Shown piece by piece: positions 26,648 through 63,900 of a stretch of 64,000 nt of DNA. The notes under the pieces were generated by a model that saw only the letters and a list, made by a program, of their open reading frames with translations, was not told the origin of the DNA and did not search any database. Every line of letters starts with the position of its first letter. Position 1 is the first letter of the stretch. Position numbers and translations under genes: made by a program. The stretch covers positions 248,001 through 312,000 of the forward strand of contig NW_025767192.1 in NCBI RefSeq assembly GCF_003918875.1, written 5' to 3'. Source of the stretch: Haliotis rubra. Lineage: Eukaryota.

Positions 26648-29419
26648 TGGTCATTATGGGATAATGGAGAAATATAGTATTTCTTTTCACCATGTGTTCG
26701 AATCCCTCATTTCATGAACCGATATATATCCGGACTGTGAGATATATTCAAGGAAACTGAACATGTACAACCAGAGCCACTTTGTTAACCTGATACCCTC
26801 ATTAAACTGGCACCAAACCCTCCATGGAACACAAATGACTTGAAAATGAACCGTTTCTTTATTTTGGGCGTTAAACGAAATAAATGGAGAGAAATCCGAA
26901 GACTTTCATTTTCGTATTTTGTTCTTTTCCAATCGTTATTGGATTCGATCAATCGGCACTCTCAGTCTCGACATTGCATCAATACAGCCGTTAACACCAC
27001 AAAATGGAGAGAATTTTCAGAGTATCAGATCAAAATAAGGACGTTACATCCGTGACATCCCGAAGTGTTACAATATAGAATATCAGTAAGAACGTGCCTA
27101 TACAACAAACATCCCCCAACACCTATCTATAAGACAACAAACTTGACTTGCAAAAACATTCACACAAAAAATAAAATAGTATCAAGGGAATTGTTCAAAA
27201 GCATTTCTGTCATATCAGAGGCACACACGCCTCGTGAGTATTGATATATTCCTGATATGCATTTTGGTCTGGTGCCAAGCACAAAGCACCAGTTCCAGCA
27301 CCGTGTGATATGTGTGTTATCATAAGCATCTTCAAAGCCTCACCACAGGCACCACAGTGTCAGAACAAGGTAGGTCTTGTAACAAAAACAAGTATATCTG
27401 CAACATGTTATATGTCAAGCTCTAACCAGGAGCCAGGGTATGGTACATTAATGCACTGAGTTTGTTCTGGCGCTGACGTGGAGCGTTGGGAAATCAACCG
27501 TTGAATGAGGAGGATGCAGTGTGTTCGTGGTCTTGGTTGAATGGATCCTTATCTTCATCACAGAGCATCCTCCGGTTATGGTTTTGGAAACAGGCTCTGA
27601 TGTTAATTATATTTTGTCTTTCATTATTGCTACCTTGTCTGGGTTAATCAAGAAATAACAACATCACGCACAAGGTAATACAGGAGTGAGATCTTGTCTG
27701 ATCCGACACCTTTATCTTGAATAACACTGGAAAAATGAAAGAACCAAAGGATCGTGGACATATGTATTTGTTCTTCAGTTCTTAAAGCTGTTGTTTCTTT
27801 GGAATATCGCATTCCACCTCAGAGAAAGGTCACTTAGTCTACGGTTCTCCGTACACAATTGCAAGAATCGTCCCAATTTAGGTCATTGGATTATCAGCAT
27901 CATGCATAATCATGTTCACTGGTTTCATATAACTTAATACGTTACACACCGGATAAAATAATTTGCAGTTATTGAAACATAATACGTATTACCTTCCTTT
28001 ATGCAAGCACGATGCCAATGTTGTAGCTATGAAAATGTTGTCATGTGTTGATCATTAACGTGGGAAAATGTTCATGTCAGATCAGCATGATACTCTATGC
28101 ATATTCCTGTTCAGTAATTGGAAGTGAATCAGTCATGTGGTGATAAGCAGAATGCCATATTCCTAGGGTGAGTAAGTGAGTATTTACGTCGCCTTTAGCA
28201 ATATTCCCCCACGATCGCGTCAAGTTAGCCTAAAGTACAGTAATCCTTTAAAGAGGCAAGTCTAGATAAGTGGAAAGACGCTTGTCTCTTAGGGGGTTAT
28301 TTGTATGTATATTTTTAAATTATCATTTAAACTATTAATTATTACCTTAGAGACTTGTACAATTCTAACCTCAAGGGTACGCCAAAATTAACATTACATA
28401 TTGCACTCTTGGAGCGTTTTTGGTGATCTTAGAAACAGATGCCTACAACTAGTACACAATGGAAGTGCAAGAAACAAAATGTGGTCCAAGATATTTACTG
28501 GACGTTAATGTTATAATTTCATGGCTTGCACAATTCCATTGTAACAATCAGCAAAGGTTTTATTTCTCACTTATGTAAAATAAGTGCTTGAACACTGCTG
28601 AAAGTGAAGGGCTCCTTTTATCAGAGGTTTTATCATTATCAATTTCGTGATGTCTGCATTTTACTGGACTATGGATTGATATGGTAACACCAAGCTTAAA
28701 AACGTAGCATGCCATATAGACAACAATCTAATCTCGAATTTAGTGGTAAATTAACATTCCATACCTGGAAAAAACAACTTCTAAATAATGCCACTCAAAG
28801 AATTTAATGTATATTGGTTATTTGAATTGAGACTCATTACATCACGACATCTGACGAACCAACATCTCCTCTCCAACCACCGTCGGCCTGAGTTGAAACA
28901 ACATGTCGCCACGATATCTTCCACTTTCGTGTTTTGATGTCTGAAGATTTGGCTATACGACATTGGCCCCATTCTTTCACACTAACAGGCTCTTAAACGT
29001 TTTAACCAGATAACCAGAGCACCATAAATACACTGGAAGTGTCGTGAAGCTGAAAGCCAGACAGGAGTTTAATGCCCAACATCCACAGAAAGCGCATAAG
29101 CCCATACAACAGTGCGATTCATCTACATTTGATGACTAAAACTTAAGATACACAATTTGAAATGGAGAACCTGAAATACACGGGAAAACAATTCAGAGGG
29201 ACATCACAATAACCGTAAGGGCACTAAAACATACTTTAGAAGAGAGGGAAAACATGAAAGGAAAAATATGCAAACGGTTTCAAAACTTTATCAAGAAAAA
29301 ACATGCTTGTGTTAAATAGTTTGTAAAAATAAATAATAATGTGTCTACTTATATTGCACTAGACTCTTTAGACAAGGTGCATGGTCAAACCGCTGGAGTA
29401 TAGTATTGGAGTGTAGTGG

Positions 29420-29767
29420 TGAGGTGAGGTGAAATTGGGTTTAACGTCGTGCTTGAGAATATTTCGCTCATATGACGCAAGTGTGTATGTGTATGTGCGG
29501 CTGCTTGTACTAGCCCAGACTGAAGCTGGTTTTATAGTGCTAGCCCACTGAGATACCATGCCGCAGTGAAGCATGAATACCCCACTCAGACACATTATAC
29601 TGACTCCGAGCCTACCAGTCCTTGTTGTACCCATTAATGCCAAGCGCCAGGCAGGGACCAACAAGTTCCATATTTTAACGTCTTTTGGTATGACGCGCTC
29701 GGGGATCGAACCTGCGACCTTCCGCTCTCCGGGCGGACGCTCTAACCACTACACCACGGAGGCGGTC
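29420..29767 (-). mobile_element. SINE family C
   Basis: About 95% identical to 26299-26647; TSD GGAGT(G/A)TAGTGG. Confidence 0.9.
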
Positions 29768-29934
29768 GGAGTATAGTGGAGTATACAAGATGACTGAGTG
29801 CAACAAGTCACACTTTATGTTGATAACATATAATACCTATGAAGGCCGAACGTTGAAATGAAAACTGGCACACAGACAATTAAACACGACACATTTTCGA
29901 ATATCTGCCCCCACCCACCACCCCAGAAAAAAAA

Positions 29935-29998
29935 TAGTATAAAAAATAAATAAAATAAATAAATAATTAATTAATTAATAAATTAATTAAAATAAATA
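29935..29998. repeat. AT-rich (AAAT/TAAT)n low-complexity tract
   Basis: Direct reading. Confidence 0.8.
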
Positions 29999-31504
29999 CT
30001 GTAGCAAGTCTAGATTACTTCGACTTCGTAACAAGAAGATCCTGTGTGGGCCTCCACTCAGAAATCAACAGGAAACATATTTCAAATTTCAAATATTTAC
30101 TGATTAGAGACTAAATACTAGTCTAGTGGGACTGAAATCAATTAAGAACAGGAGTATTACCTGGAACATTAGTTCAATGTCAGCAAGATAGCATTCTTTA
30201 AGCATTGCTGCCGAATCTGTTGTATATCAAATGAACTAAATGCTCCAGAATCATGGGAAATAACTAACACATGTTTCTTATTATGAGACTCCATGGTCCA
30301 CCTTCGACTGAATGCTAGTGCAACAAAAGGTTAAAATAACGCCCACGTTTAGCCACTCGTTTTTTGACTGAAAGGTCGCAAGTGAAAGTTAGACTATCTT
30401 AAAATAACACATGTGGGCGTGTGTGCGATTACATCTGTCCTTGATTAAATGAGGCTGACTACAGTACACCTCTTACAACATACGATATTTTTTCACAGAA
30501 CAGCTAGGACATGTACTTCCTGTGGCATGCGTTAATCGATGTGTTTTAAGATAAAGGAGTTATTGACGTAACGAAGACGAGCTTCACGAAACACGGGTAT
30601 TAAAACCAACCATATGTCCTGAGTAATCACGACTAACAGAAATATCGTTTAGAAATGCTTCTACAGAAAAAGAAAAATGAAACGGAGCCTAGACCAAGGA
30701 TTAATTTATCCCTATGCCAAGGCAATCTTGACTTGCAAACGCATTATAGGCATAGTTTTGAACTTTTCATTAATGTATTCGCTAGATCCTGGAAGGACGA
30801 AAGCCTGGATAACGGTGGGTGACTGTAACAGGCTCATTGTAACGTTCATTTGGGTTCATGATATATCTATCAGTTGATGCATATGAAAAACGGAGTGTTC
30901 GGTAGTTGAACTGTTTAATAAATCAAGTTCTTTCCTGAACGTATATCGCGCAGGTACTTGTAGCTTGACACTTAAAGGTTGCCCAATCGTCGAAGGCACA
31001 GCAATTTGTTATGTAGAGTTTGCGGCCCTTAGGTGAACCAGATTGCACTGATGCTATGTTCGAACCCTAGATTCAGACTGATTACGAATGTTACATCCTG
31101 ATTAAAGGTGAGGTGGCAAAATTACTGTACGTACATTGCCATGGTCATGCTCGTATGGCTACGTGTGCTTGTGCTTGTCACGACTTTGCTGGCGTTGCGA
31201 TGTTAACCGTTCTGAAGTGTGACATTGATAACAAACCCAGACTCAGCATACTGATTGTGTTATGGGAGTGTGTTTTTTGTAATTTGTAATTGTAATATCA
31301 CATTGATTAGGCGATAGTTTTTATGGGTCACAATGTTTTAAGTTTTGAGTGTAGGTTGTGGCTCGCATCTCGCATTATATGTGTTCAATGGCAACAGTAT
31401 TTTTAGCGGTACGCATTGATAGCACTTCAGAGTTGCCTCCCTTGGCTGCTTTATTTTGTTATGACTTCAGGGTCTTGTCACGTCTTGTGTTTACGATGGC
31501 TTTC

Positions 31505-34500
31505 CAGGGCTCGCAAATTCCACTCGTCCGCTCGTATTGACGAGTAAAATTTGTTTCGGGCAAGTGAAAAACATAATTTACTGACCCAACTAATTTTCAA
31601 AACAATAAGTTCAAGTTTTAACATATCGTCATTCGCGAGTAGCAGTATTTTCAAATTTCCCCAAAACTAACCGCAAAGTTTAGGTCTTGATGTGCGTTTG
31701 GTATCCATTTTAACAGACATCATGCAGCGTGGTTTCGTAACCTAAAATGCTTCGATCGGATATCGTGATTGGCTGCTATTAATAAACTGACCAATGAGAA
31801 AAGTCATCACAACATGAATGGTACTGATGTCGAATCAGAATAAGCTCTATAATAGTGAATTCCCTGCGTGTTATTACCGATCGTTTATTGTAGTCAACTT
31901 TCTTTTGGGTGATTATTTGTTTTTATTATTATACATAGGTAATTTCCAGGTTAGATAAAATACTTGATTTAATTTACCACGTACACTAAACTGCAAATTA
32001 GATTAAACAGACAACGAGATGGAAAGCTTAATTCAGTCTAATGTTTTGAAAATTCTGACATTTAGTAAACGCACTTGCCAGGTGTCATTGATATTTTCAA
32101 CGAGGTAATATAGTTCACTAGTTCATGCTTTGTTGGGTTTCCAATATCCATTACATTGATTTGTAATCCGCTGTTTTCTCAAATATTTCAAACCTTAACT
32201 GTACGTGTATCGTCTTGCAAAGCCAAGGGAAGTGACTAGGGATAGTTTTGATGTTGTAAGCGGCCTGTTGCTATTCACGCTGAACTGTCACTGATAACGA
32301 TGTCGGATATTAAGAAGTTTCTTGTTGGCGGGAGTGATGCAGAGAGGAAAAAGGAGAGTATGTCTGCTAAACATAGAAAACAAAGAAAACTTAGTCAAAA
32401 GAAATATGACACTGGAAAACGAGAGCGTTCTGTTCAAACAGCATGGCTGACTGAGTTTGACTGGGTGGAGATGAATGAAGATGATGATGGATGCGAACTG
32501 TTTTGCACTGTGTGTCGCAAATATCCAAAGTTATCGGATCCAAAATCAAATCTTGTAGTGGGATTGAAAGGCAATTTCAGGAAAGAGAGTTTGAGATTTC
32601 ATGATAAAAGCAAAAAACATACTCAATGTTGTGAACATGATAGAATTTTGGAAAAACCTGAAAATGCACAATATGCCATGGTTATGCACAGAGTTGACGA
32701 AAAAATACTGTGGCTTATGAGAAACTTTTCACAACTGCATACTATGTGGCATTGGAAGGAGAGCCATTTTCAAAATGTGAACGATTTTGTCAGCTGCAGT
32801 CTAAAAATGGTATAAATCTTGGTGCCAATTACATCAACGACCTTGCATGAAAAACATTTACAGAAAATATCGCACAGGTTTTGAAAACAGAAGTTGCCAC
32901 AGAGTTGAGAGAAAGTAGGTTCGTCAGTGTTTTGTTAGATGGTTCTACAGATAAAGGAATCATTGAGCAAGAAGTTGTGAATGTGCGATATGTGAGTGCT
33001 GAAGGTGAAGTGAAGACAAAGCTTGCAGATATAGTCAACCTTGAACATGGTCATGCTAGGGTGTGAAAGCAGGAATTCTAGAGGCATTACCTACTGTAGG
33101 TCTGTCAGAAGACAATCTCTCCCAAAAACTTGTGTGCATGAACATTGATGGCGCAGCTGTGAATCTTGGAAAGAAGGGGGAGCTGTGAAGTTGCTCATTG
33201 ACGACCTGAAAGGTAGACCTGGTGCAGAAGACTGTGACAAATATATCACTGGGGTACACTGCATTGCACACAATTTGGAACTGGCAGCGTGTGACACGAA
33301 AAAAGATTGCAAATATCTCAAAAAGTTTGAAGAAGTTTTGAAAGGAATTTTCAAACTCTACTACTATTCACCTAAAAGGAGAAGGGAACTTTATGCAATT
33401 GCTGAGAGTTTGAACTGTGATCTGAAGCATTATTGGGGAGTGAAAGAAGTTAGATGGGTGGCCAGTCAAAGTAGGGCCTTGAAGTCAGTGCATGGGAACT
33501 ATGATGTCACGCTTGTTAACTTGGATGAAATAGCTACTGGGAGGGATGATGCTTCTGCTGGAGCAAGAAACTACTTGGCTGAGATGAAAACGCAACGGCG
33601 GCTCCTAAAGATGTTGCACTTTATGATTGACTTCACAAATCTCGTAAAAGACGTGTCCAATGTATTTCAACTAAAGAAGACCGTCATATCAGAGGTTCAG
33701 AGACGGATAGAATCTCTCAGGCAGAAACTCATGAAGATGACAACAAAGAAAGGCAAGGCATTTCAGGCATTCTTAGAGGATAGCAAAGGTGGGAAGTTCT
33801 AAGGTCACGAAATCAGAGCTCCAAAGCAAAGAGCAGCATCTGCACTACAATCAGAAGATCAGGATGTAGATAAAGAACCTTGACAAGGACATTGACAGCA
33901 TCTTGGACACGACAGCAGTTGTTCTTCAAGAGCGATTTATCAAACATCTTGGTGGGGAACCACACTCTTTGTTTAATGTCTTCGACTTCAACATGTGGCC
34001 AAACTTGGCTACACAACCAGACGAGTTCAGATGTTATGGAGACCTAGAGATTCAGAAGTTAGTTGAAATCTACAGCCCATAACTCACTGAAGAGGAGAAA
34101 AACAATGCTCTTGACGAATGGCTTGACTTGAAGATGTATATGAAAGACCTTAAGGCAGGCCAATGGTGGATGCATATGGGTTTACCAGTATGTCACAGAC
34201 AGCTATGAAGCATATTCTGCCTCTAGTGTCAATCATGTTGACAATTTCACCCAGCACAGCTGACTGTGAGAGGGGCTTCAGTTTAGAACAGGTTGAAGAC
34301 AAACCTCAGAACCAGTATGAGCCAAGATACACTGAGGAATCTGATGAGGATTACCATGGATGGTCCGTCATTGGAAGACTTCCAGCCCCAGAAATATGTT
34401 CTGCATTGGCTGCAAAGCGGAACAAATAGAAGACATATTGCAGGCCACAAATGCACAGGACCAAGAGTTTCACCACACCAGAAATTGTCTAACCCAGAGA

Positions 34501-34901
34501 TAACTGGACCTTCCAGTGCACCACCTGCATCATCAGAATCAGCATCATCTCCAGATCTTGCCATGATGAGTGTCGAGTAGAAGTCCTTGAAGTGTTTACG
34601 TTAGTTTTACCACTGACTCTTAAAGTAACCAGTTTGTTCCAGTCCAGACTAAAAGTAACATTTTTCAGCTTTATTACATGGTTAGCAAATTCAATTTTGT
34701 CAAAGATTTTGTACAGAAGACAAAGTAAGTAATTTTATTGTAGTTTTATTCCAAGCAAACATTTTGAAATAAGGTAATTTACATTTACATTCATTGTGTT
34801 CCATGATCTATAAGGCAAGTACAATTTTAGAAGGACGAGTGGAAAGTTCATATTACTCGCCCTGCAGGGCGAGTGCAGATTTATTAATTTATCGAGCCCT
34901 G
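31505..34901 (+). mobile_element. hAT transposon (hAT5-like), full length
   Basis: TIRs CAGGGCTCGCAAATT and AATTTATCGAGCCCTG; 5-bp TSD CTTTC (31500-31504 and 34902-34906). Confidence 0.9.
32300..34580 (+). pseudogene. Frameshifted hAT transposase (ZNF862-like, TTF-type zinc finger)
   Basis: Zinc finger FCTVCRKY..HDKSKKH, catalytic VLLDGSTD and NIDGAAVN, HCIAHNLELA, RW and STADCERGFS, spread over several frames. Confidence 0.9.
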
Positions 34902-35689
34902 CTTTCGTGAACATCCTGAGTGGATAATGATGCTGCCTAGTTTTGCTAGAATGCTCTAACTGTGTAAGAGCTATATAAAGGCTGGTTGTTGCGTTGTGCG
35001 ACACGGATTTATCACATGACTGTCTGCATCTGCATACATCTGTCTGCCGTCATCAAGCTGATACATACTGTCGGCCATCGTCAAGGTTGCTCAACATCGT
35101 AAAGACTGACCGTGCTTGCCTATATTCAACTGTTGTCATTGCAAACAACCTTCAATCAGTATATCTGTTCTTATCGTGAATGTTAAGACTCTGGTGAATT
35201 AATATTTTATATTTGTGACCCAATATTTTAGATTTGTGACTCAACTGCATTGTACTAGATATCTGTTTTGTCATTCATTGTAGTTTGCTCATTGTTTGCT
35301 CAATATATTATTAAATATTTTAGACTTGTCTGTGTTCTATATTGCTGGTTCAAAAGGGACTTTTAAACCTTTTGTCACGGCAAATTATTAACCGTAACAA
35401 TTGCTAAATGACCGACAGTACTCTATTTTCAACTACTGCCAAGTGCCAGGCGAGGTCACAACAAACATCGACCTAAAGGTCTGTTTGTATGATGCGCCCC
35501 GGGATTGAATCAATGACTTTCCGTTCTAGTAACACTATTCACTTGACCATGGCGGCCCTCTTACCGTTTGTGGGTACCATATCCTTTGTTTGAGCAAGAG
35601 CTACGTCCAAGGATCATCCGCTCATTCAAGTCTCGCGGAAATAATTAATCTTGTGTTTTCGTGTGTCATCAGCCTGATGATTGGAACGT

Positions 35690-35808
35690 CACACAGAAGA
35701 CCCAGGTTCCATTCTCCACATTGGAATAATGTGTGAAGTCCATTTCCACTAAGATATTGCTGGACTATTCCTAAAAGCAGCGTTAAACCATACTCATTCG
35801 CTCGCTCA
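35690..35808 (+). mobile_element. Degenerate SINE family A
   Basis: Decayed B box, AATGTGTGAAG body and tail. Confidence 0.65.
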
Positions 35809-36852
35809 GTGATTTCGCCAAAATAGTGAACATGTACCCTTCTGGTGACCTTCCTCCCACATCAAGCTGACATCTGGTGACATAATCATCACATAATGTT
35901 CAAAGCGAGCCCAATTGCTGTTTTCATAGGAATCAGCGCTGAATGGCTTGTATGTTTTTGGCAAGACGTACTGAAGGAAAACTTCTTCTCAAAATATAAC
36001 GTCGGATTGAAAACACTCTCTGTAATTTGCATGTCCTAGCATAAAGCGTAACAATACTGAAATTGAAAACGTCCACCGGAAGGATCAGAACGAGGCTGCT
36101 GAAGAGGGAAATTGAAATGGTTCTCTCTGATTGGAATTCTTGCTATCAGCGCTATTAAAGTTTCTTTGAAATCTTCCTGGAGTTGGGAATCTTGATTACA
36201 AAATCTTACAGAATGCATTTTTTCATGCATTTCTGAAAATGTTCTTCGTTCGTTGTTTCTTTCAATTGCATGTGATGGAATAAGATCACAAGAGCTGGAA
36301 ACAGCCATGAAAATATTGCTGTCGAGAGCAGTGGAGATCTATCACAATATTTTTCGAAGGCAGCTATTACGTAAAAAACACCCCAATATACCTGATGCGA
36401 CCAACGTGTAGTAACGACGTCAATATATAAAGGACATCGAGACAGCAACATATTACTTAAAGAATACATGGAGCATGTTTTAGTTTTTAGTCTAAATCAC
36501 GCTTCTTTACCGCAAATTCATTAAGGTGCTTCGCTTCACGCAGGTTGCCAAATCTTTTAGCAAGACGAAACGTTATTTAATGCTTATTAATTAAAGAAAT
36601 GATTTTACCTGTGTCAGATGTTTTTGTTTTTTGGAGCTACTTGATTTAAAAATAAAAATGTTAATGTAGGCATGGATTTGAAGCTGCTTTCAACAGTATT
36701 CCAGTTACATTTCGACAGCTAAAGTGGGTGCAGGTCCCAGGCGTTCAGCGTGAAACCTATAGGATTATGGATCGGACAAACCCAGAAATGTAATTGGTGT
36801 GAACAGATATTCGCAATGCTGATAAATTGGACCATAGGTAGGTCATAATAAA

Positions 36853-37070
36853 GTTTGTTTTGTTTTGTTTATTGTTTAACACAGCACTATTCCAGCTACT
36901 TGACGGTGGTCTGTTCTGGACCAGACAATCCAGTGATTGACATCATGAGCTTCGATCTACGCAACTGGGTTACGATGACATGGGTCATGCAAGTCAGCTA
37001 TACTGATCACCTGGCCCCTCTTAAAACAACCATAGATTGTCGATGACCAGTTCTACCAGGATCGTCTCGG
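36853..37070 (-). mobile_element. SINE family B
   Basis: CTGGACCAGACAATCCAGTGAT body. Confidence 0.8.

Positions 37071-51321: not shown

Positions 51322-51354
<33 letters not shown>
51322..51354. repeat. (TG)n microsatellite
   Basis: Direct reading. Confidence 0.95.
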
Positions 51355-51358
<4 letters not shown>

Positions 51359-54300
51359 ATAGATGAATATAACTTTATCTGTACGTGTTGTGTGCACATA
51401 CCAAGCAATCATATAGAGATTGTTTCCAACCTCATGACGTTTATGTCCAACTTGACAAATCTAGTATTCTTTGTATTTGAATTGTATTTGGTTGTGGCAC
51501 GTTGATGCAGAATAAACGCAGGCGAAACCTGATCAGAGTATATCAAAAATGTCCCTTCAACTATACATCGGTTTGTGCCAATAATGCCCCCATATTTCAC
51601 AGTTTCTATGAGTTAGAACTTCAATGTTTCCATACCCTGAGACCTACTTAATGACGTTTGCGGCGCAACGTCGGAAGATGAATGGATGTTGTGGGAGCAC
51701 TGTTTGTTCAGGAAATTATCGTGCCGGTGTTTGCGACTGGTGTAAGAGTCTGCAAGGAGGACACTGGTGAAACGATCTGCTAGTGTTGAAATAATTTCTC
51801 TTAACATGTTATTTACAACATGAAAAGATTTATGCATGAAACAAATGGACTATAATTACACTGTCTTCATCAACCCACCCTTGTCGTAAGCCAATACCTT
51901 GCAGTTACAGACCAAGACTGAAAGACTACAGACTTGAGAATAAATAGAGATTATTACACGAGCAAGTGTGTCATACGACTTATACGAAATGAGTGTGAAA
52001 TTGTGTATACACAAATTTTGTACGAGTTTCGTATAAGTCGTGTGTGGCACACTTGTGAGTGTAATAATTTCGTTATTGACCATTATATTCATGTACATTT
52101 GTGCAGTAAAACACGGTAAGCAAGTGTGACTGCCCTGTTCATTGAGGTCACGTTCAATTGTGTAACGACGTCACAGACAACGAAATACAGAAACAATGGT
52201 TGCTGGGCAAAAGCGATATGTGCACATATGACACACATGACACTGGCTATGTTTCACCATATGGATAATAAATATGATCCACGTCGTGTTCCAGATTACT
52301 GTGACGTCCGCGGACAGAGAGAATGTTTGTATGCGCTTGTCCATACCGATGCAAGTTTTATAGTGCTATCTCATTGGGAATCCATGCCACAGTTTGGATC
52401 GTGCACTTGTTATTGTAACATGCCACAGTTTGGCATGGGTATCCAACTCAGACGGAGCATACTGACTGAAATGCGATTCATTATATCACCCACCTGAACC
52501 TAGACGAACCAACACTCACTCTCTCTTCTACAACCACCGCTGGCCTCAGTTAAAACAACATGTCGCCACAATATCTTCCACTTTGGTGTTGTCTTGTCTG
52601 ATGATTTTGCTACAGGAGATTGGCCCCGTTCTCTCTCACTAAAAGGCTCTTAAACGTTGTAACCAGATAACCAGTGCTCCATACATTCACTAGAGGTGTC
52701 GTGAAGCTGAAAGTCAGACAGGAGTTTAAATGCCTAACATCCACAGAAAGCACATAAACCTAGACAACAATGAGGCATCTACATTTACTTACTAAAACGT
52801 AAGATACACTAGGTTTAATGGAGAACATGAAATACACGTGTAACCAATTCAGGGGGAGCAACACAATAACCTGATGGGCACGAAAACATACTTTCGAAGA
52901 GAGGGAAAACATGAAAGGAAAATAATGCAAACGGTTTTAAAACTTCATCAAGAAAAAACAAGACCTATGTCCTTTGAAGCGAGGCTTGTGGTAATGAAAA
53001 AATAAGAAATAATGTGCCTACTCATATTGCCCTGGACTCTTTAGAGAAATTGCGTGCTCAAACCGCTAGTGTTATTACCCCGGTCAATGGTTCAGCGTGC
53101 AGTCCATTTTCTTTCAAAGCTCCCAGTAAACATAATATATTTGAAGACTGAGATTGTTGAAATGTATACTGGCATGCAGATCCTGAAACATAAGAAATAT
53201 TCTAGCATCCCCTGCAAACCATCCCTCCCCTAAGTAAGTAGTCGATACTATAGCAGGTCTAGATTACTTCGGTTTTGTAAAATCGATATATTCTTTGGTC
53301 CCTTAATTATTATGTATCCGCAGACAATTCAACAGAAAATATTTCAAATTTTGAATATTTTCATATATGAGACTTAATACTAGTAAAGAAACAAAATAAG
53401 GGTATTATCTGAAATATTAGTTCAATGCCAACGAAATAGCATTCTTTAAGCATTGATGCCGAATCCGTTGTACATCAAATGAACTAATTGCTCCAGAATC
53501 ATGAGGTGTAAGAACACACATTTCCATAATGAGATTGAACGAAAGCATTTACTTCCTGCATGGCACTCCTCAACTGAATGCCAGTGCAACAAAAGGTTAA
53601 AATAGCGCCCACGTTTAGCCACTCGTTCTTTGACAGAAATGTCGCAATTGAAAGTTAGACTATCTTAAAATAACACATGTGGGCGTGTGTGCGATTACAT
53701 CTGTCCTTCATTAAATGAGGCTGACTGCAGTACACCTCTTACAACATCCGATATTTTTTCACAGAACAGCTAGGACATGTACTTCCTGTGGAATGCGTTA
53801 ATCGATGTGTTTTAAGATAAAGCGAGTTATTGACCTAACGAAGGTGAGCTTCATGAAACACAGATAATAAAAACAACCATATGTCCAGGGTAACCACAAC
53901 TAACATTTTGTACCAGAAATATTGTTTAAAAAGGCATCTACAGAAAAACAAAATTCAAACGGAGCCCAGATCAAGGTTTAATTTATTCTAAAGCTGTGGC
54001 AATCCAGACTTGCGAACGCATTGTAGGCTTGAGTTGCACTTTCCTTTAACGTATTCGCTTGATCCTGGAAGGAAGAAAGCCTGTATAACGGTGGATGACT
54101 ATAGCAGTCTCAATGTAACGTTCATTGGGGTTCATGTATATCAGTTGATGCTTATGAAAAAGGGATGATCCGATAGTTGTATTGTTTAATCAAATGTTGA
54201 ACATGCACCCTTCTGGGACCTTCTTCGCCCACCATGTTGACATCGTATGTTCAAAGCGAGCCCAATTCCTGTTTTCATAGAATCAACACAGAATGGGTAC

Positions 54301-56511
54301 TTGTAGGAAAATTTCATCTCAAAAATACAACGTCTTTGAATTAATTGAAAAGGTTGTCCTAACAATTGTCAAACTGAAATTGAAAACATCCATCTGAAAA
54401 AGAAACTATTCAGAACGAGGCTGCTAAAAGGGAAATTGAAATGGTTCTCTCTGATTGGAATTCTTGCAGAAATCTTCCTTTGAATCTTTGATTTACGAGA
54501 AATATGGGTTGCATGGAGTGGAATGAAGACCAGTTCTAGATACCTAATGCGACCAAAGCTATATCGTCTATTTCATAGGATGGCTTTGTTTTCTTTTAAC
54601 ATTACTCTTATTTACAGCAAATACATTAAGGTGCCTCGCTTTAAAGGAAACGCTCAACCGATTTACTTGTGTCAGACTTTTGATTTTCAAAAACTGTTTT
54701 TGAAACAACAACAAAGAGAGTAAACGTTTTGACAAGACGTACACCTATATCGTCACGGATGGCCACATAAAAGAAAAAGACAACAAAGAGAGTAAACAAG
54801 ACGTCACACATGTGAGATGCACACTGCATGCCAACCCTGGATTTAATTTCAAATTACATGAACGGTCCCAGCGTGAGTTTGAAATAATACTTCCCGTGTG
54901 CTTCGGGAAAGTTCTGATGCGTTCATGGATGCTCGTACGATTTGCTGAGAGATATTAAACACTTCAGTACCCAACGGGTAGCTTGGATCCCAATGGATCG
55001 GAAATATACGAACTGTTACGAACTTTCTCATGTATTTCAGTGATCGTAAGTTAGATCTTTGCAAATATTTATTGAATAAGTAGGTTGAACAGTAGTTCAA
55101 CGGTGGTGCAACCTAGAAAGGTGGTACAAACCTGAATGGGAGCTTGATGTGGGTAGTTCTTAAAACCCGAGGACCTCAAGCATCATCGGACACAGATCCT
55201 TTTCAAATCTCAAGAATACTTGCCACTTATCTCTGTGTAACCCACAAAAAAGGGTACGGTTGTTAATAAGGCTAATTATGGTTTGGGATCTATGGATGAC
55301 GTATTCTGCAACAGTGAAAGGGGGCAAGTATGAACAGCGAACTGTCTTTCCTATATAACCATCCCGAAAAGTTGTGTTGATTGATGATTCAGAAGGTAAG
55401 ATGCAGCATTTGTGATATCGATTGACATATGATAAAAGACGCCCGTGATGTGTGATGTGACGTTCAGCCTAATTGTACATTAACCGATCTCGGGATCCTT
55501 CATGCCATATAACCTTCAATATGTTTTTGGGAGATCCCAGGTGACATTTACTGTCTCGCAAATCCCATTATCCTACAGACATGATCCTGCGGGCGACTCT
55601 AGACTTTAACAGAGTATAATAACAATCCGCGGTAGTGTCATCATATTGATCAGATTGATTCCAACAGCAGTTTCAAATAACAGAACAAGCACAATAAACT
55701 TACAGTCCTGTAAGAATCATAATACAGTATACTTGTACGTCTGTGATATTATCAGTAAATGCTTTCTGTAAATATTGTAGTGGAAAATTTAATTCGTGGC
55801 GACATAATAAGTCACACTTAAATGTAATCCGTCATTGATATAAAAAGCAACGTGGACGAACTTGCCAATCATCTTGGTCACCTCAATCAATTAGTCGCCT
55901 CTTGGACAAGCATAGATTGATAAGGAGATGTGGGTCTGTCTGCCTGTGAATGTTGCTGAGACAGATGTCAGGTATCTTTTTTTCCTCAAAAACACTTGTA
56001 AAGTATTTAAGTTAGAATTTGACTGGACATTGGTCTCCTGCAAAAACACGTTTGGTATGTTTTCAAGTAAAGACGAAAAACATGTGCAGTCTCTTACAAA
56101 ACTCTCCTTTTAGTGCAAGCACGAAACAAAACTAAACTATTGTCGAAATAACTCTATTAACATGGCAAAAAGAAGTAATAGATAGGGGATCGATCAATTC
56201 ATACACATGTGCGCTATTGGGGTTTACCAAAAAGGAATATTCATTTGGTTCCTTCGTTGAAAAATAACACCGTACATCTTAATTGACTGAGTGAATGAAT
56301 TGGGTTTAAAAACCTTTGAACAGTATTCCACTTACAACGAAGCGTGATGCAGGCCACAGATGTACATCTTTGCTGTGAAACTATTGTTTGTTTGTTGTTT
56401 AATGTCATACTCAGCAATATATCAGATATATGGCGGTGGTCTGTAAATAATCGAATGTAGACCAGACAGTCCAGTGATCAACAATTTGAGCATCGATCTA
56501 CACAATTGGAA

Positions 56512-58320
56512 TAATAATAATAATAATAGCATATTTGTAACGCGCATTTGTATCCATGCTTATGCATGATCAAAGCGCACAAATAAAAATGCAAGTAAGG
56601 CAAAGAGCTACAGTTCAAAGGCTATCTTGAACATGTGTGTTTCTAGATTGGATTTAAAAGTATGAAAGTCAGAACAGTCTCTGATACTCTGTGGGAGACT
56701 GTTCCAGGCCATTGATCCTACGTGGACAAAGGACCTGTTTCCATACTGCACTGTCTTTACTTTGGGTACAACAAGCACGTTCTTATCCTGTGAGCGAAGA
56801 GATCGGGAAGGCTTCTACACAGTTAGAAGGTTGGATATATAGGAAGGCGCAGTTCCAGTGAGACAGCGGAAAACAAGGCATAAGAGTTTAAACTTGACCC
56901 GGAACTCGACTGGAAGCCAGTGGAGAGTGTACAGTATAGGAGTAATGTGTTCATATTTTCCAGAGCAAGTCATGATGTGGGCGGCGACGTTCTGCACTCT
57001 CTGTAGCTTGGCTATATGGGTCTTTGATGCACCGGCCAGTAAACAGTTACAATAATCAAGCTTACTCATTACAAGTGACAAGAGTCTTGGCAGATTCAAC
57101 TGTAAGACATTGGCGAATATGTCCAATGTTGCGTAGTGACAAGAAACAGGTTTTGACAAGATGAGATACATGAGGATCAAGTGACAAGATTGAATCTAAG
57201 AACACGCCCAAGTCTTTGACTTGATCAGCAAAGTAGATACATGAATTGTCAAATTCCAGTGAGTTGACTCCACACTTGGACCTCTGCTTGTTTGGACCAA
57301 GTAGAATGCACTCTGTCTTGTTGCTGTTGAGCTTAAGTTTGTTGTGGGTCATCCGGGATTTAACGTCATCACAGCAGTGACTCGTGTCTGTTAGTGCGCT
57401 ACATGACTGTTCTTGGTCTGCAGGAAAACACTTGTATACCTGTGCGTCATCTGCGTATTGATGATCTATGTTGTATTCAGCAATCACACTTCCAAACTTC
57501 TTAACATACAAAGTGAAGAAGACCGGCCCTAGGACCGATCCCTGTGGTACACCATGTTTGAGATAGACTGGAGCAGAGTGATGTCCATCTATGAGCACAG
57601 TCTGACTGCGGGAGGTTAGGTAGGGCTTGAACCAACAGAGAGCGGTGCCATCAATGTGAAAATCATACCTGAGACGATGAATGAGCATGTTGTGATCAAT
57701 TGTATCAAAAGCTGAACTTAAATCGAGGAGTGTTAAGATACCAATATTGCTGTTGTCCAAACCAAGTCGTAGATCATTTATAACTTTAAGAAGAGCAGTC
57801 TTAGTGGAGTGGTGAGCACGATAGGCTGACTGAAGATGGTCATACAAGTCATGTTGCTGGAGATGTTCTGACATCCTCATATTCACTGCTCGCTCAATGA
57901 GCTTTGAAACATACGAGAGGTTGGATACAGGTATGTAATTACCAAGTACGTTGCAATCAAGGTTTGGCTTCTTCAAGAGAAGTTTTGCTAGCGCAGATTT
58001 GATAACAGCGGGGATTTCACCGTGTTCAAGACGTGTGTTGATGATTCTGGTGAGTACTGGGAGAAGAACATTAAGATCGTCTAAAAGTACACATGTAGGC
58101 AACGGGTCAAGAGCGCAAGCTGTGGGGTTTGATCTCCTGGTCAACATACGTACTTCAGCCTCACTGAAAGGTCTGAAATGTGTCATTTCGCCATTGTCAC
58201 TGGAGTCTCCAGTTTAGGGACACTCTGGAAACTCCAGGATCTTGTCTGGAGTCACTGTGGCCAAAATGTGGCATGTTACTAGTTTCCACCATTGAATCAT
58301 GGATTTTGGCTATTTTATGA
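56512..58320 (-). mobile_element. 5'-truncated L2-clade LINE inserted into a SINE B
   Basis: 374-aa RT ORF 57062-58186 (LLDLSSAFDT, GVPQGSVLGP, YADD), frameshifted C-terminus (LDYCN, LHWLPV) and (TTA)n tail. SINE halves lie at 56385-56510 and 58320-58360. Confidence 0.92.
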
Positions 58321-59349
58321 TATGTCAACCAAGCCAGCGAGCCTGATCAATAGTCGGCTGTTGCGGTGAAACCAACGAACATGGTAAAGATTCTGGCAAA
58401 CCTAAAACTTTAATCGCAGATTCAACCCGTGATTCAACCCACAATCAAACGTTTCCCGGGTGCACAAGGAACGCAACTTTGAACAGAGAGATGTTGCGCC
58501 TTCCACGACTGGCCCATGCCCCTTTAGGTCTTGAAGCAATGGTCGAAGAAATATTCCTCTCACCGCAGCCTTCTTCACAGGACGCTGTTTCGATCACCAT
58601 ACAGTTCAGATAGGCACCAGACCTGATCCGTATGTGTACTGATTAAACACAACAAATCCCGATCCCAATAGTTCATTTTCATCACGCTCAATCAGTCTGC
58701 TTATTTGCATATTCATGAGTTGAACGCTTGCTAAACGTGCCTTGTAGGTTTTTCTCTTATCTCAATCATCCTAGTCAGAGCTCCGTGATATGGGGCAGCT
58801 CCCATGGGCTTCTGGGTTATTGAACATCATTGAAACAGGAGATGGTTCACCGGCAGCTGTCACCGAGTGAAAGGACCTCCATTACAACAGGATTATTTAC
58901 CGCACCCGAAGAGGTTGCGTGCCAAGGCGTTAACTCTCTGTCATAAATATACTTAGTACCTCACCATGCCCGAAGACTGACTGCATTGAATTAATCACAG
59001 GCTTTGCAAATAGACGAAGGTGAGAAGTTGTAGGTGCAATAAAATAAACATATTTGGTACTGAGGTTAAAAAAACCCAGATATACTGAAAGATTGTGTCG
59101 AATATACCGTGACTATCAGAAGTGCTTTGAGGTGTTCTTGCTTCGACACAATCACAAAATAATGACTAAATAATGAATAAGCAGAGCCCCAAACTCAACA
59201 AGCATGAGCTAATAATAAAAGAATGCAGGAAACAAAATAGATTAACTTCAGAAAGATCATGTCCTAGACACATTGCACATTGACCGGAAACAGGAATTCG
59301 GGTGAGTCTTGGCGCATTGTACGCTGATGTACCTCATAGATTAGATGCA

Positions 59350-60930
59350 TACTGCCGGAAATGCTTTGAAAATGCTTTTTGGCTTCAATATCAATATGAT
59401 GAATTTGACACAAGATAAAAGCACATATATGATACATGTACGACTCTACCTAGTTGGATATTAAAGCTCAGTTGAAAAAATGCACCTGAGGGGTGACTTC
59501 ACAGGAGGAAAGGTTGACGTTTTAACAACATTTGTAAATATTCTAAGTACAAACTGTAGTTTTGAAATCAAAACCAGGTAGGAAACACAAACTGGATAGC
59601 TTTGATAAGGGTGTCAAACGCCGTGTAGTTTATAAACTGTATGAACGCAAAATCCCACTGACGTGTGCTAAAATACAAGATGAGATCAAAGATACAATAC
59701 ATGATTCGAAAACAACACTTTTTGTAGCTCTGGTAGAAATGGGGTTCAGGTACACCAAAAGGGGAGATGACAGAGATGTTTTTAGAGAAAAGTACTCAAT
59801 CCTGTCCATGCGATCAGCTTATCTCAGAACAGTTGAAGAATACTGCAATTTGGGGTTTCAAATTAAAATCACTCAACCGATCGGAAAAGGCTTCCTTCAG
59901 ATTGTTTTAAGGCACGAGTGTTACCATCAGGCAAAGATAGACGCCTGATCATCTTGCATACTGGTACCCGTAGCAAGGGACTGATTGGGGGTTGTGACTT
60001 TGTTTTTAAGGCCAAGAAATCTGATGGTGACTACCATAGCGAAATGAATGGGCAGGTATTTTTGGATTGGTTCGAACATCAACTTTTACCGCAGCTGGAC
60101 GAACTAAGCGTTATTATTTTGGATAACACCAGTTACCATAACCTGCCTGTCCCTGGTACCATCACACCCACTATGAGCAATCTCAAGGCTCATTTGCAGG
60201 ATTTTCTCACTTCCTGTAACGTGCCTTACAGGCAATCAGAAACAAAGCCCCAGCTCATGGAACAAATCCGGCAGTACAAAAAGCCAATCAAGTACATCAT
60301 TGACGAACTAGCTGCAAAACAAGGTCACATAGTTCTGCGTACACCAGTACGGCACTGTGAGTTACAAACCCATCGAGCCGATCTTGGGTAACTGTAAGAA
60401 TTTTATTGCTCGCAATAATACCACATTCAAGCTTTCAGACGTTAAAGAGCTTGTGTATGTTTCTTTTGCGAGAATTACCCCAGAAGTGTGGCAAAAGGCT
60501 GAAGACCGTGTTCTCAAAATCGAGGACGACTACCGAATGCGGGACGGCGTTAACGTCAGCCGAGTTGCACCTGTTGTAATTCCGCTAGAATCCTTGACCA
60601 GAAGTGATACTGACACTTAATATTTTGAGACGGTCCCTGACATGTACTGCCCATGCGTTACATGAACGCTGTCACCCTGTCTGCCTGCCAGGTGGGTCAC
60701 AGTATCGTTTGTTTCTTAGAAGTGTTTCTACCATGGAGTTTTTCGATATTTTACGAGTAATCATTATGATTAGGGAATGGTACATCGTGATTACTCATAT
60801 GCCATATTAGGTCGAGGTGGTATGAATGATTATATATGAATTTTGAATCTCGAATATCAACCATTATCAAATAATTGCCAAAAAGCATTTTCCAAGCATT
60901 TCTGGCCCTACTTTACTCTGCAGAATTGCA
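59350..60930 (+). mobile_element. IS630-Tc1-mariner transposon, Sailor-like (DD~83E), decayed
   Basis: ~30-bp inverted repeats at 59354-59383 and 60877-60906. ORFs 59562-60620 carry RLIILH, DYHSEMN, VIILDNTSYH and HCELxPIE. Absent from copy 1 at ~40665. Confidence 0.85.
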
Positions 60931-63900
60931 ATGGCAAACTGAACGACTATCAGTAAAACTTTCGCTGACTTTATGTATAAAATACATTTACCTAATGCAG
61001 AGAGATATAGAATGTGTACAGAGAACGACTGTAGTTTAAGGAACGATTTAGAAATAGTCTTCTGGAGGGAGACAATGACTGATTTCACCCCATCTTTTTG
61101 AAGAAAGAAAATTAATGATTTATTTACTTGTTCTTACAAAGTAGCATTTGTTTTAAAAATGAACAGAAACATACTGTGTTCAACAAGACACCCAGGGATA
61201 CCAAATGGCTTATCCATAACATGGTGCAATAAACACAGTGACATAGCATTGTAACGAAAACGCCAGAGAAAGATCAGTTTCTTTGTGCAAATTTAGTTTC
61301 ACTGGGCGTAAAAACGGTATCGTATTTATCATTACCGTCGAAACATTACTAGAAAATAAAGAAAATGAGTTACAGCATTTGTATGTATCTTATGACCTCC
61401 ATCGAAAACGTGAACAAGATCAATTGTGACATCACAGGTAAATGACATCACATGAATCCGTAATACAAGCATAACATTTTACGGCAACTGTCCACCAGAT
61501 TGCTATACTCTTTCACGAGATATAACAAATGTTGTCAAATACAATAAGAGAACAATAAGATGCCTTTCTTTCCAGATAAGTCCCAGATCCATAAACTTAA
61601 TGTAGCGTAAATATGTTTTAAACTATACAGGTATGATTGTCGTGGCATTTTGGAGCCTTGGTGATTGGGAGATATAATCATCCTTCCTGCAAATATTTTT
61701 TCAGCATGGTTTCTTTGTACGAGACTTTCAAATTCTACAAATATCAAGAACGATAACAAGAGTGCATAATTACCGAACTAGATAATGTACCTTCTCAGAA
61801 GGCATATGATATGAAATTGAAACTGCTTAATCAAAGTTTATTGATTATTTGAAGAAAACTGTATTCCTTCTTAAATTACTGTGGAAAATGCTTCTCGAAA
61901 CTGGTAGTTCTTTCTGATAGGAAAGATAAATGTTGCGGCTAAATGATGGAATCGATAGTAACTCTATTTCCTTTCATTTATAAACACCTCTTGTACGGAA
62001 AAATACATCATCAGCGTGTCTATGAAATAGTCGTCGTTCTATGCCATGGGCCACAGGTGCAAATACATCGGTCCCATTAGGAAGCTCTCTAATATGAGTC
62101 TCATATATATTCATACAGCTCTCATGTTACACGTGACCAAACTCTCGTTCCGAGTAGATCTAGTATTTGAGTTGATGCACGTGTTATCTTCTTGGGCAAG
62201 GATCGATGGTGATAAAGACGTCGTTCTCTCCTTAGGAGGAATTCTTGAAAAGTCAAGTAGAATACTCTATAGCTGGCCCAGAAAGACCTTCCTATTTGGG
62301 ATGTGATTCTGTGTCTAGTGAATGGTAATGTGGCCCGCTTGTTGCACCGTCATTTGATAAAATCACTCTCCGACGACTGTAATGGGATATCTAAACTTTG
62401 CGATTTTAAATTGATATTTTTAACTTCTATACCTACGACTACGATCATAAGTTTTCGACTGTACATCATTTTACTACATCTATTGTGGGAAAACCATATT
62501 TTTATAATAGGTTGTAAAACTAAAATTTGAATATCATAATACAAATTAACATTTTCAAACCGTAAGACCTTTAGGTAGCATTGCCACGCAAGGTTCAGAA
62601 TTCATTGACCATTTCCGATCTTCAAACAAATAGAAATGAATTCAATTCCAAAGTTAGGACTATCACACATCAGATTATTATATATATTTGATGGGTTACA
62701 TTTGATTGGTGACCAATTTGACGCACATATGAAACCTCTCCCACTTGTTTGGTCTGCGGATGCGTCTAAAACACGTGAACCCCATAAAACGTATTCTTAA
62801 CCCGCATTCTTAAATGTCACTAACTCTTTGAGGAACGCATTCATATCTTTCTGGAGTATTTTTACATAACTACGGTATCATATACACGTAATTCGCCTGA
62901 GACACAATAACCCTGTTCTGACACTCGATGCGTGCACAAATGGTAATTACAATGTATATATTCATGGCCTATATTTAATGTCATGACTCAGGTTCGAATG
63001 TTCAGGAACGTGCTGTCAGCTTCATCTGTAGTAACAGTTTGTTTTCAGAGAAATGATATATTAGTATTTTTTGTCAGAATGATAAAATGCATTGCCGCAT
63101 TTGCTGAATGATCTATTTGTACGACTTAACGGCAAAAACATGTGTGCTTATCCGTTGAAAGACTTATGTTGCTTCGCGCACTGAAATCAGCACAGTTATT
63201 TACATGTCTCTGATGTTTACGTAGAAATGTTGTAACACTGGTAATACGATATTTAAATATGGAATCTTTGAAAAACAAGTGTAAAAACAAATACGCCAAT
63301 TGCGTGCATTTTGTGTAAAGATCAAGGAAAATGTTAAAACATTTTTTAACCTACACAACTCGATAAAATTGTTTCATTTCTTCTCGTTGTATGTTTTTCG
63401 CAATGGTATGTGATATTTTAAGGTGTATTCAATCATTGCGCTTCTCAAATAGGAAGCGAGTTCATCTGGCCTTCTCACAGAGGATAGTTAATCACAGGCA
63501 GGTGGACGGCAGACTAATAACTCGGTCAAAGTTGATGATAAGACATATACACCGGCTTTTTCCGAGGAAACAGATTTAATGTCGGGTTACCTTTCAAACC
63601 AATATCCATCCATTTCAAATGTGTTACTTTTGGTTTAGAGGTCAGACGTTGTAGCAATTTGGCGAGATTGATTATCGTGGCTGTTGAAAAAGTAAAGACT
63701 TCATCTTAGACCCTAGACGTTAAACGGAAAGCAAGAATTATGACATCTTGTAAACGTTGCTTGCGTTTTATGGTGTTCATGACGTAGTAAACGAACCTGA
63801 GTGTGTTCAACAGAATAAGTTGTTGAGCATGTGTTTTGGAGAGACTTCGACATAGGATAGTCTCGACCAACCACTTCCTACAAACACGTTATCAATTTAC

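What the first reader, a model, noticed from the sequence alone, without database searches (positions are those of the whole stretch)
28800..63890. Family II: near-invariant non-coding islands in a diverged 8-kb duplication
Flanks are about 75-80% identical with many indels, but the islands are much closer. Pairs: 30308-30555/53573-53820 (~10 mismatches); 38120-38380/55530-55790; 39635-39956/58657-58979 (~11 mismatches, no indels); 41805-42120/62015-62330; 42930-43020/63139-63228; and a perfect ~57-mer at ~43276-43332/63582-63638. Stops were shared by both copies in most frames I checked, arguing against current coding constraint. This points to selection on RNA or DNA function, or patchy gene conversion.
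Basis: partly seen in the sequence, partly recalled or inferred. Interest (0 to 1): 0.7.

Follow-up and report, generated by a model that had tools for sequence, protein, structure and literature searches.

The report
Conserved non-coding islands, triplicated abalone DNA
A roughly 20-kb stretch of gene-poor abalone DNA is present as three old tandem copies. Ten short non-coding blocks inside it change about three times more slowly than the DNA around them, between the copies and, for the two blocks where another abalone's sequence could be read, between species too; they are probably functional control elements, but their job is unknown.

Summary
The repeat is not an 8-kb duplication. It is a three-unit tandem array: A at window 28823-52466, B at 52467-71033, and C beyond the window. 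By its assembly statistics the genome is the Haliotis rubra assembly.

Ten islands of 100-460 bp show about 6% mismatches and about 7 gap openings per kb. The alignable flanks show 16-18% and 20-23 per kb. Each of the four main islands occurs only three times in the 1.38-Gb genome.

The islands are non-coding:
- All six frames are closed.
- The indels inside them are 1, 4 and 8 bp long.
- Substitutions show no codon periodicity, and there are no Pfam hits.

They do not look like structured RNAs, microRNA hairpins or internal exons. Their GC and CpG content match the flanks.

Tree topology changes along the unit, so conversion or unequal crossover did occur. Two results favour purifying selection:
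- A-B divergence is even across all ten islands.
- In contigs of another abalone, orthologous flanks differ by 11% but two islands by only 3%.

My best reading is a triplicated block of cis-regulatory DNA modules, with confidence 0.45. No RNA or chromatin data could be reached, so the function is inferred by elimination. The scan flagged similar island-bearing non-coding tandem repeats elsewhere in this genome.

The parts
28823..52466 (+). Unit A of the tandem array (23.6 kb). It is inflated by A-only insertions: a SINE at 29417-29767, a 4.9-kb element at 30923-35820 and a SINE-like repeat at 37790-38030.
   Evidence: colinear chains A-B and A-C. The start of the unit matches again at 52467 and at window-equivalent 71034.
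52467..64000 (+). Unit B. It continues to window-equivalent 71033, past the window end. It carries a B-only insertion with a reverse-transcriptase ORF at 56514-58319 and a 1.6-kb insertion at 59347-60936.
30309..30567 (.). Island 1 (B copy 53575-53834; C copy contig 320137-320400)
   Evidence: pairwise mismatches 3.9-4.3%, against 16-27% in the adjoining flanks. Unit C has a 4-bp indel. All frames are closed. There are three copies in the genome.
38120..38356 (.). Island 2, the weakest of the main four (B copy 55531-55768)
   Evidence: mismatches 4.8-7.9%, with an 8-bp deletion in unit C. It holds the only exon-like pair of conserved splice-type sites (38167 and 38297, + strand), but every frame is closed.
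39613..39989 (.). Island 3 (B copy 58636-59012), with a 103-bp run identical in all three units at 39633-39735
   Evidence: mismatches 1.3-4.8%. Unit C has a 1-bp insertion. It folds worse than shuffles (z +2.1 to +2.8). There are three copies in the genome.
41696..42157 (.). Island 4 (B copy 61910-62367), with two conserved CACGTG sites at 41920 and 41969
   Evidence: mismatches 3.9-6.8%. One-bp indels differ between the copies. None of 137 predicted pairs is compensatory.
42909..43134 (.). Island 5 (B copy 63117-63231 plus 63344-63457, split by a 112-bp B insertion). It has decayed in unit C.
   Evidence: A-B 5.7%; A-C and B-C 13-14%.
43245..43345 (.). Island 6 with the perfect 57-mer at 43276-43332 (B copy 63551-63651). 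Unit C lacks it.
45367..45557 (.). Island 7 (B copy beyond the window at 65335-65526). It is deleted in unit C.
   Evidence: A-B 7.0%.
47126..47514 (.). Island 8 (B copy beyond the window at 66658-67046). It is deleted in unit C.
   Evidence: A-B 7.5%, with no codon periodicity. The 85-codon open stretch has no Pfam match.
50635..50735 (.). Island 9 (B copy at 69493-69593). It has decayed in unit C.
   Evidence: A-B 5.1%, A-C 14.9%.
51651..51759 (.). Island 10 (B copy at 70605-70713; C copy at 84457-84565, window-equivalent coordinates)
   Evidence: mismatches 4.6-8.3%.

Best explanation
An ancestral block of about 15-20 kb of non-coding DNA in a gene-poor part of the blacklip-abalone genome was tandemly triplicated long ago. 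Most of each unit has since drifted: alignable parts differ by 16-18%, and there are many indels and independent transposon insertions. About ten blocks of 100-460 bp are held back by purifying selection to about one third of that rate, for substitutions and indels alike. Because they are non-coding, unstructured, not exon-like and unique to this array, they most likely act at the DNA level as cis-regulatory modules of the enhancer, silencer or boundary type.

Occasional gene conversion or unequal crossover between units is superimposed. It explains the mosaic of which two units are closest. Unit C has begun to degenerate: islands 6-8 are deleted, and islands 5 and 9 have decayed to flank level.

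Shown: the array, the islands, their non-coding nature, the rate difference within the genome and (for islands 3 and 4) between species, and the mosaic. Inferred: selection as the cause, and DNA-level regulation as the function.
For: 1. Rate contrast. Islands show 5.9-6.4% mismatches and 6.4-7.2 gap openings per kb. Flanks show 15.7-17.6% and 19.6-23.3 per kb. The main islands have the same boundaries in all three units.
2. Between species. In contigs of 'organism C', three pieces cross places where units B and C are deleted or indel-rich, so they must be orthologous to unit A. These differ by 11.1% (81/731). The island 3 and island 4 pieces differ by 3.1% (18/584), Fisher p = 2e-8. Neutral concerted evolution cannot lower divergence between species.
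3. A-B divergence is homogeneous over ten islands (chi-square 6.5, 9 df, p = 0.69). None of 5000 simulations with random conversion ages was as even. No island pair is at 0%.
4. GC (0.36-0.45) and CpG o/e (0.6-1.1) match the flanks (0.38 and 0.83), so neither biased conversion nor a CpG effect explains the islands.
5. Non-coding: all frames closed; indels of 1, 4 and 8 bp; no periodicity; no Pfam hit.
6. Not structured RNA: fold z-scores near 0 or positive, no compensatory pairs, no microRNA-like hairpins, and Rfam blank.
7. No conserved acceptor/donor pair frames islands 1, 3 or 4.
8. Each of the four main islands has only three copies in the genome, so they are not transposons.
Against: - No chromatin, reporter or RNA data were reachable, so the regulatory function is reached by elimination.
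- No obvious target gene was found. From window-equivalent -60 kb to +144 kb, long ORFs gave only transposases and one TRIM-like ORF, and no homeobox hit fell on this contig.
- No motif is clearly shared among the islands.
- Keeping redundant regulatory modules in three copies is not the default expectation.
- Where A and C are close in the flanks (3.0-7.9%), island 4 is 3.2%. The slow-down there is weak, a ratio of about 0.5.
- The between-species figures rest on a handful of short contig pieces. Paralogues were also laid on unit A: nearly all the listed 'other letters' in run X1 are the unit B and unit C letters.
- Indels sit at several island edges, as a homology-limited conversion model would also predict.
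Confidence: 0.45

Rival explanations
1. The islands are exons or other retained parts of unstructured non-coding transcripts: a lncRNA gene copied three times, or untranslated exons of a distant gene. Selection then acts on the RNA sequence.
For: - The same rate contrast and between-species conservation as in the best explanation.
- Island 2 holds a conserved acceptor-like site at 38167 and a donor-like site at 38297 on the + strand, which would frame about 130 nt.
- Island 3 avoids self-structure (z +2 to +2.8), as some single-stranded functional RNAs do.
Against: - Islands 1, 3 and 4 have no conserved splice-type sites at their edges on either strand.
- The constraint (rate ratio about 0.3 over 250-460 bp) is stronger than is usual for lncRNA exons (general knowledge).
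- The run search listed no RNA run holding a twentieth of the words. That is weak evidence, because RNA coverage of this species in the index is unknown.
Confidence: 0.2
2. The islands have no function. They are the last segments still similar enough for gene conversion between units, while stretches interrupted by indels and transposon insertions escaped and diverged (homology-limited concerted evolution).
For: - Conversion or recombination clearly occurs, because the closest pair of units switches along the unit and between islands. B-C is only 1.3% apart in island 3.
- Indels or insertions sit at several island borders.
- In island 4 the A-C distance is similar to that of its 3' flank.
- In run X1, unitigs over islands 3 and 4 have 1.2-1.8 times the depth of the deepest flank unitig listed (2-4 times that of the others). 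Copies may therefore be identical in some individuals.
Against: - Islands 3 and 4 are also about 3.5 times less diverged than orthologous flanks in another abalone, which neutral conversion cannot produce.
- A-B divergence is evenly about 6% in all ten islands rather than scattered from 0 upward.
- The islands are not GC-enriched.
- Three units share the same boundaries at the main islands.
Confidence: 0.2
3. The islands are artefacts or mutational cold spots. Either the hybrid Nanopore/Illumina assembly and its polishing distorted the similarity between copies, or local mutation rate is low for reasons unrelated to function.
For: - The assembly is a polished hybrid meta-assembly with haplotig purging (PMC6774278).
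- Several unit-A-specific letters in the islands are not seen in the contigs of run X1.
Against: - Independent short-read contigs of three organism labels cover both flanks and islands, with low differences for the home species.
- The differences within islands are mostly substitutions rather than homopolymer indels.
- Cold spots of 100-460 bp with sharp edges and normal base composition have no known mechanism.
Confidence: 0.05
4. The islands hide short protein-coding exons.
For: A few 50-85-codon open stretches are open in all copies, for example 47129-47383 +, 38198-38356 + and 39586-39738 -.
Against: - Every island is closed in all six frames across its length.
- Indels of 1, 4 and 8 bp separate the copies.
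- Substitutions show no third-position excess.
- Ten open stretches gave no Pfam match at E up to 1.
- The word search with a 55-aa ORF of island 4 found nothing.
- At 95% identity, open stretches stay open by default.
Confidence: 0.03

Closest known systems
Duplicated conserved non-coding elements (dCNEs) and redundant 'shadow' enhancers
   Same: These are non-coding blocks of a few hundred bp. They are kept in more than one copy after duplication, evolve far more slowly than the surrounding DNA, are unique in the genome and have no RNA-structure signal.
   Different: [quoted passage not shown] Here the copies sit in a local tandem array with no recognised gene inside or nearby. Conservation was tested only within one genus, and no enhancer activity is known.
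Concerted evolution of tandem multigene families, where exons are homogenised by gene conversion while introns and spacers diverge
   Same: Tandem units show a mosaic of similar and diverged segments, and tree topology switches along the unit.
   Different: The similar segments here are not exons. They show no GC enrichment and no very young tracts. Two of them are also conserved between species, which conversion alone does not explain.
Other non-coding tandem repeats with conserved cores noted by this scan in the same genome (s1-349482, s1-344924, s1-329472, s1-322322)
   Same: These are old tandem duplications of about 8-12 kb of non-coding abalone DNA that hold short near-invariant blocks, on other contigs.
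   Different: They are different sequences. The four main islands of this array have no copy outside it. One of those cases sits upstream of foxAB genes, whereas no gene was found here. I did not re-examine those notes.

Membership tests
Conserved non-coding elements / cis-regulatory modules | No protein-coding capacity | tested here: met
   All six frames are closed. Indels are not multiples of three. There is no codon periodicity and no Pfam hit.
Conserved non-coding elements / cis-regulatory modules | Substitution and indel rates well below those of the neighbouring neutral DNA | tested here: met
   Islands show 6.2% mismatches against 17.6% in flanks, and 6.6 against 23 gap openings per kb. 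The segmentation scores are 31-109.
Conserved non-coding elements / cis-regulatory modules | Conservation between species | tested here: inconclusive
   Contig pieces of another abalone label differ by 3.1% in islands and 11.1% in orthologous flanks, p = 2e-8. Only a few short pieces were available, only islands 3 and 4 were covered, paralogues were also laid, and the comparison stays within one genus.
Conserved non-coding elements / cis-regulatory modules | Regulatory activity or open chromatin, and a target gene | not testable with these tools
   No ATAC, ChIP or reporter data were available. Only transposase ORFs and one TRIM-like ORF were found from window-equivalent -60 kb to +144 kb. No homeobox hit lies on contig C2302.
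Gene-conversion tracts (concerted evolution) | Discordant local genealogies among the copies | tested here: met
   Site patterns switch between AC|B, BC|A and AB|C along the unit and between islands.
Gene-conversion tracts (concerted evolution) | Tract ages scattered, including very recent near-identical tracts | tested here: not met
   A-B divergence is homogeneous over ten islands (p = 0.69), and 0 of 5000 simulations were as even. The lowest pairwise value is 1.3%.
Gene-conversion tracts (concerted evolution) | Paralogues cluster within species, and between-species divergence equals the neutral rate | tested here: inconclusive
   Between-species island divergence is about 0.28 of the flank value, which argues against this feature. 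No per-copy trees could be built.
Gene-conversion tracts (concerted evolution) | GC enrichment from biased conversion | tested here: not met
   Island GC is 0.36-0.45 against 0.38 in the flanks.
Structured non-coding RNA (including microRNA precursors) | A fold more stable than shuffles, compensatory pairs, or a match to a known family | tested here: not met
   Fold z-scores run from -1.6 to +2.8, except island 4 on the minus strand (-3.0). There, 0 of 137 predicted pairs are compensatory. No hairpin is better than those in the flanks. Rfam is blank.
Spliced exons (lncRNA or UTR) | Conserved acceptor and donor sites at the block edges, and RNA evidence | tested here: inconclusive
   Generic splice-site scoring finds a framed unit only inside island 2 and none at islands 1, 3 and 4. 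No RNA run was available.
Transposable element | Multiple dispersed copies in the genome | tested here: not met
   Each of the four main islands has exactly three matches in the 1.38-Gb genome, all in this array.

The most novel reading that the evidence does not exclude
The array is a tandemly amplified regulatory landscape. It is a block of about ten cis-regulatory modules, or of short unstructured RNA genes, specific to abalones. At least two of the three copies are kept under purifying selection without any gene inside the unit. This may be one instance of a recurrent feature of this genome, since the scan flagged similar arrays on other contigs.
Probability: 0.3. Interest if true: 0.55.

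Novelty: new member of a known kind. Interest (0 to 1): 0.4.

Why it matters
Conserved non-coding elements are barely charted in molluscs. Here paralogous copies side by side give an internal clock: drifting flanks next to blocks evolving about three times more slowly. That pinpoints ten candidate functional elements of 100-460 bp without needing a multi-species alignment.

If they prove to be enhancers, the locus would show that whole regulatory blocks can be amplified and retained in tandem. The partial decay of unit C would then show how redundancy is resolved.

If the pattern instead comes from homology-limited conversion, it warns that paralogue-based 'conservation' can mimic constraint.

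Either way this is an ordinary-sized finding. It is real and cleanly delimited, but its function is unknown.

Tried and rejected
- Protein-coding exons: rejected. All frames are closed, the indels shift the frame, there is no codon periodicity, and there are no Pfam hits. The word search with a 55-aa ORF of island 4 found nothing.
- Known RNA families: Rfam at gathering and at E up to 1 gave only low-complexity microRNA-like noise at 51286-52071 and a SINE tRNA head outside the unit. ARAGORN found nothing.
- Structured RNA and microRNA hairpins: rejected.
- Transposon origin of the islands: rejected, because only three copies exist. No weaker fourth copy lies within 204 kb.
- Biased gene conversion or a CpG effect: rejected on composition.
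- Shared motif grammar among the islands: nothing convincing. There is one 10-mer shared by islands 1 and 3, and an E-box-like 8-mer in three islands.
- Expression test: no RNA run was offered, and all four laid runs behaved as DNA contigs.
- Neighbouring genes: the homeobox family scan found none on this contig.
- Literature: two searches found no report of such arrays in molluscs.
Full report
**What is there.** The window is G000:C2302:248001-312000 of a 1,378,282,171-bp genome in 2,855 contigs. Earlier notes of this scan call it abalone. The published Haliotis rubra assembly has 1,378,265,264 bp in 2,854 scaffolds (PMC6774278). The difference of one record and 16.9 kb fits an added mitochondrial genome; that last point is my inference. 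A single extended run of homeobox hits on one contig also fits an invertebrate.

- Unit A lies at 28823-52466.
- Unit B lies at 52467-71033.
- Unit C lies at 71034 to about 84916 in window-equivalent coordinates, beyond the window. I read it from loci L004, L008 and L005.

The units differ in length mainly through private insertions and a deletion:
- Unit A carries a SINE, a 4.9-kb element with a C17orf113-type zinc-finger ORF, and a second SINE-like repeat.
- Unit B carries an element with a reverse-transcriptase ORF and a 1.6-kb insertion.
- Unit C lacks the equivalent of about 44.4-48.1 kb of unit A.

**The observation.** Sliding-window identity and a log-odds segmentation of the three-way alignment give four strong three-way islands: 30309-30567, 38120-38356, 39613-39989 and 41696-42157. 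Pairwise high-identity runs add 42909-43134, 43245-43345, 45367-45557, 47126-47514, 50635-50735 and 51651-51759. The longest run identical in all three units is 103 bp, at 39633-39735.

| Measure (pooled) | Islands | Alignable flanks |
|---|---|---|
| Mismatches | 5.9-6.4% | 15.7-17.6% |
| Gap openings per kb | 6.4-7.2 | 19.6-23.3 |

Each of the four main islands has exactly three matches in the whole genome, all in this array. No weaker fourth copy lies within 204 kb.

**Not coding.**
- All six frames of the large islands carry 2-9 stops.
- The copies differ by 1-, 4- and 8-bp indels inside the islands.
- Mismatches are spread evenly over the three codon positions.
- Ten open stretches, including an 85-codon one in island 8, have no Pfam match at E up to 1.
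- The word search with a 55-aa ORF of island 4 found nothing.
- Open stretches that stay open in all copies are what 95% identity gives by default.

**Not a recognisable RNA.**
- Rfam finds nothing in the islands at gathering or at E up to 1.
- Fold energies of islands 1, 2 and 8 equal those of dinucleotide shuffles. Island 3 folds worse than shuffles on both strands (z +2.1 and +2.8). Only island 4 on the minus strand is more stable (z -3.0).
- For island 4 on the minus strand, the consensus fold of the three copies has 0 compensatory pairs among 137 and a positive (penalising) covariation term.
- No 80-nt window in any island gives a hairpin better than those found in the flanks.
- A generic splice-site scan finds a conserved acceptor/donor pair only inside island 2 (38167 and 38297, + strand). 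It finds none framing islands 1, 3 or 4 on either strand.

**Conversion did happen.** Three-way site patterns show that the closest pair of units changes along the array:
- A and C are closest across 39990-42465, for example AC|B 55 against 5 and 4 at 42158-42465.
- B and C are closest at the unit start and in island 3 (BC|A 16, AC|B 6, AB|C 2).
- A and B are closest at 30581-30900.

A single duplication history cannot give this pattern. Conversion or unequal crossover between units must have occurred in flanks and islands alike.

**Why conversion alone does not explain the islands.**
1. A-B divergence is the same in all ten islands: 3.9-8.3%, chi-square 6.5 on 9 df, p = 0.69. When island ages were drawn at random, as independent conversion events would give, none of 5000 simulations was that even. 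No island pair is near 0%.
2. The heterogeneity in pairs that involve unit C comes from islands 5 and 9. These have decayed to flank level in C (13-15%), and islands 6-8 are deleted there. This looks like loss of constraint in one copy.
3. Island GC and CpG o/e equal those of the flanks, so biased conversion and CpG effects are not visible.
   - The run search found DNA contig sets of three coded organism labels.
   - In 'organism C', three laid pieces cross places where units B and C are deleted or riddled with indels: 40610-40802, 42293-42515 and 42486-42800. They must therefore be orthologues of unit A. They differ from it at 81 of 731 sites (11.1%).
   - The pieces over island 3 (39761-39962) and island 4 (41741-42122) differ at 18 of 584 sites (3.1%), Fisher p = 2e-8.
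   - Concerted evolution does not slow divergence between species, so a ratio of 0.28 points to constraint or to a local mutational cold spot. It is close to the within-genome ratio of about 0.35.

**Caveats.**
- The between-species figures rest on a few short contig pieces, and only islands 3 and 4 were covered.
- Paralogues were also laid on unit A. Nearly all the 'other letters' listed for the home-species run are the letters of units B and C.
- The depth of two island unitigs in run X1 is 1.2-1.8 times that of the deepest flank unitig listed (2-4 times that of the others). Copies may therefore be identical in some individuals.
- Where A and C are close in the flanks (3.0-7.9%), island 4 is 3.2%, so the slow-down there is weak.
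- Several island edges coincide with indels. A homology-limited conversion model predicts that too.

**Function.** By elimination, the best reading is a set of DNA-level cis-regulatory modules copied with their block. The alternative is short unstructured RNAs. I could not find a target:
- From window-equivalent -60 kb to +144 kb, long ORFs are transposase or reverse-transcriptase remnants plus one TRIM-like RING/B-box ORF.
- No homeobox hit lies on this contig.
- The rest of the contig could not be fetched.
- No motif is clearly shared among the islands. Island 4 keeps two CACGTG sites in all copies.

**Comparison with known things.** The islands behave like duplicated conserved non-coding elements or shadow enhancers. 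They differ in sitting in a gene-less local tandem array and in being tested only within one genus. They resemble conversion-homogenised exons of tandem gene families in their mosaic pattern, but they are not exons. The scan has flagged similar non-coding tandem repeats with conserved cores on other contigs of this genome; I did not re-examine those.

**Verdict.** This is a new member of a known kind. Interest is moderate because the function remains unknown and the decisive data (orthologous arrays, RNA, chromatin) were out of reach.

Noticed in passing
window 26296-26647 and 29417-29767: A 350-bp SINE with a tRNA-like head (Rfam tRNA hit at 26571-26643, minus strand, 33 bits). The two copies are 95% identical. 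At least eight more copies at 85-94% lie within 204 kb, so the family is young and active. One copy is a private insertion in unit A.
   Followed up: partly
window 14415-14650, 19286-19509, 37790-38029, 47865-48078 and others: A second short interspersed repeat of about 230 bp occurs on both strands at 72-90% identity. Many copies lie in and around the array.
   Followed up: no
The self-comparison showed no near-invariant islands in it, so not every tandem repeat in this region has them.
   Followed up: no
window 57062-58186 (-): A 374-aa ORF with a reverse-transcriptase domain (RVT_1, E = 1.5e-25) lies inside a 1.8-kb insertion present only in unit B (56514-58319).
   Followed up: partly
window 30923-35820: A 4.9-kb insertion is present only in unit A. 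Its ORFs at 32300-32815 (weak C17orf113-type zinc finger, E = 5.6e-06) and 33185-33802 suggest a domesticated or decayed DNA transposon.
   Followed up: no
window 18264-18484: Two head-to-tail copies of a 111-bp unit, 94.6% identical.
   Followed up: no
L010:7643-8839 (-), contig C2302 about 359.6-360.8 kb: A 399-codon open stretch has weak RING and B-box matches, so it is TRIM-like. It was the only non-transposon coding candidate seen from window-equivalent -60 kb to +144 kb.
   Followed up: no
G000 contig C2134, 1.33-2.71 Mb; also C2740 347-371 kb, C268 and C2067: The homeobox scan shows one very extended run of about ten strong homeobox hits on the same strand, spaced 80-260 kb apart, which looks like a Hox-type cluster. 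It also shows several tight tandem homeobox arrays, including ten hits in 24 kb on C2740.
   Followed up: no
window 42004/42005, 41901, 41926, 41780, 38136: Letters private to unit A in the assembly, including a missing A in an A-run, were not seen in any laid contig of the home-species run. Those contigs carried the unit B and unit C letters instead. The cause could be paralogues laid on A, polymorphic conversion, or residual assembly error.
   Followed up: partly
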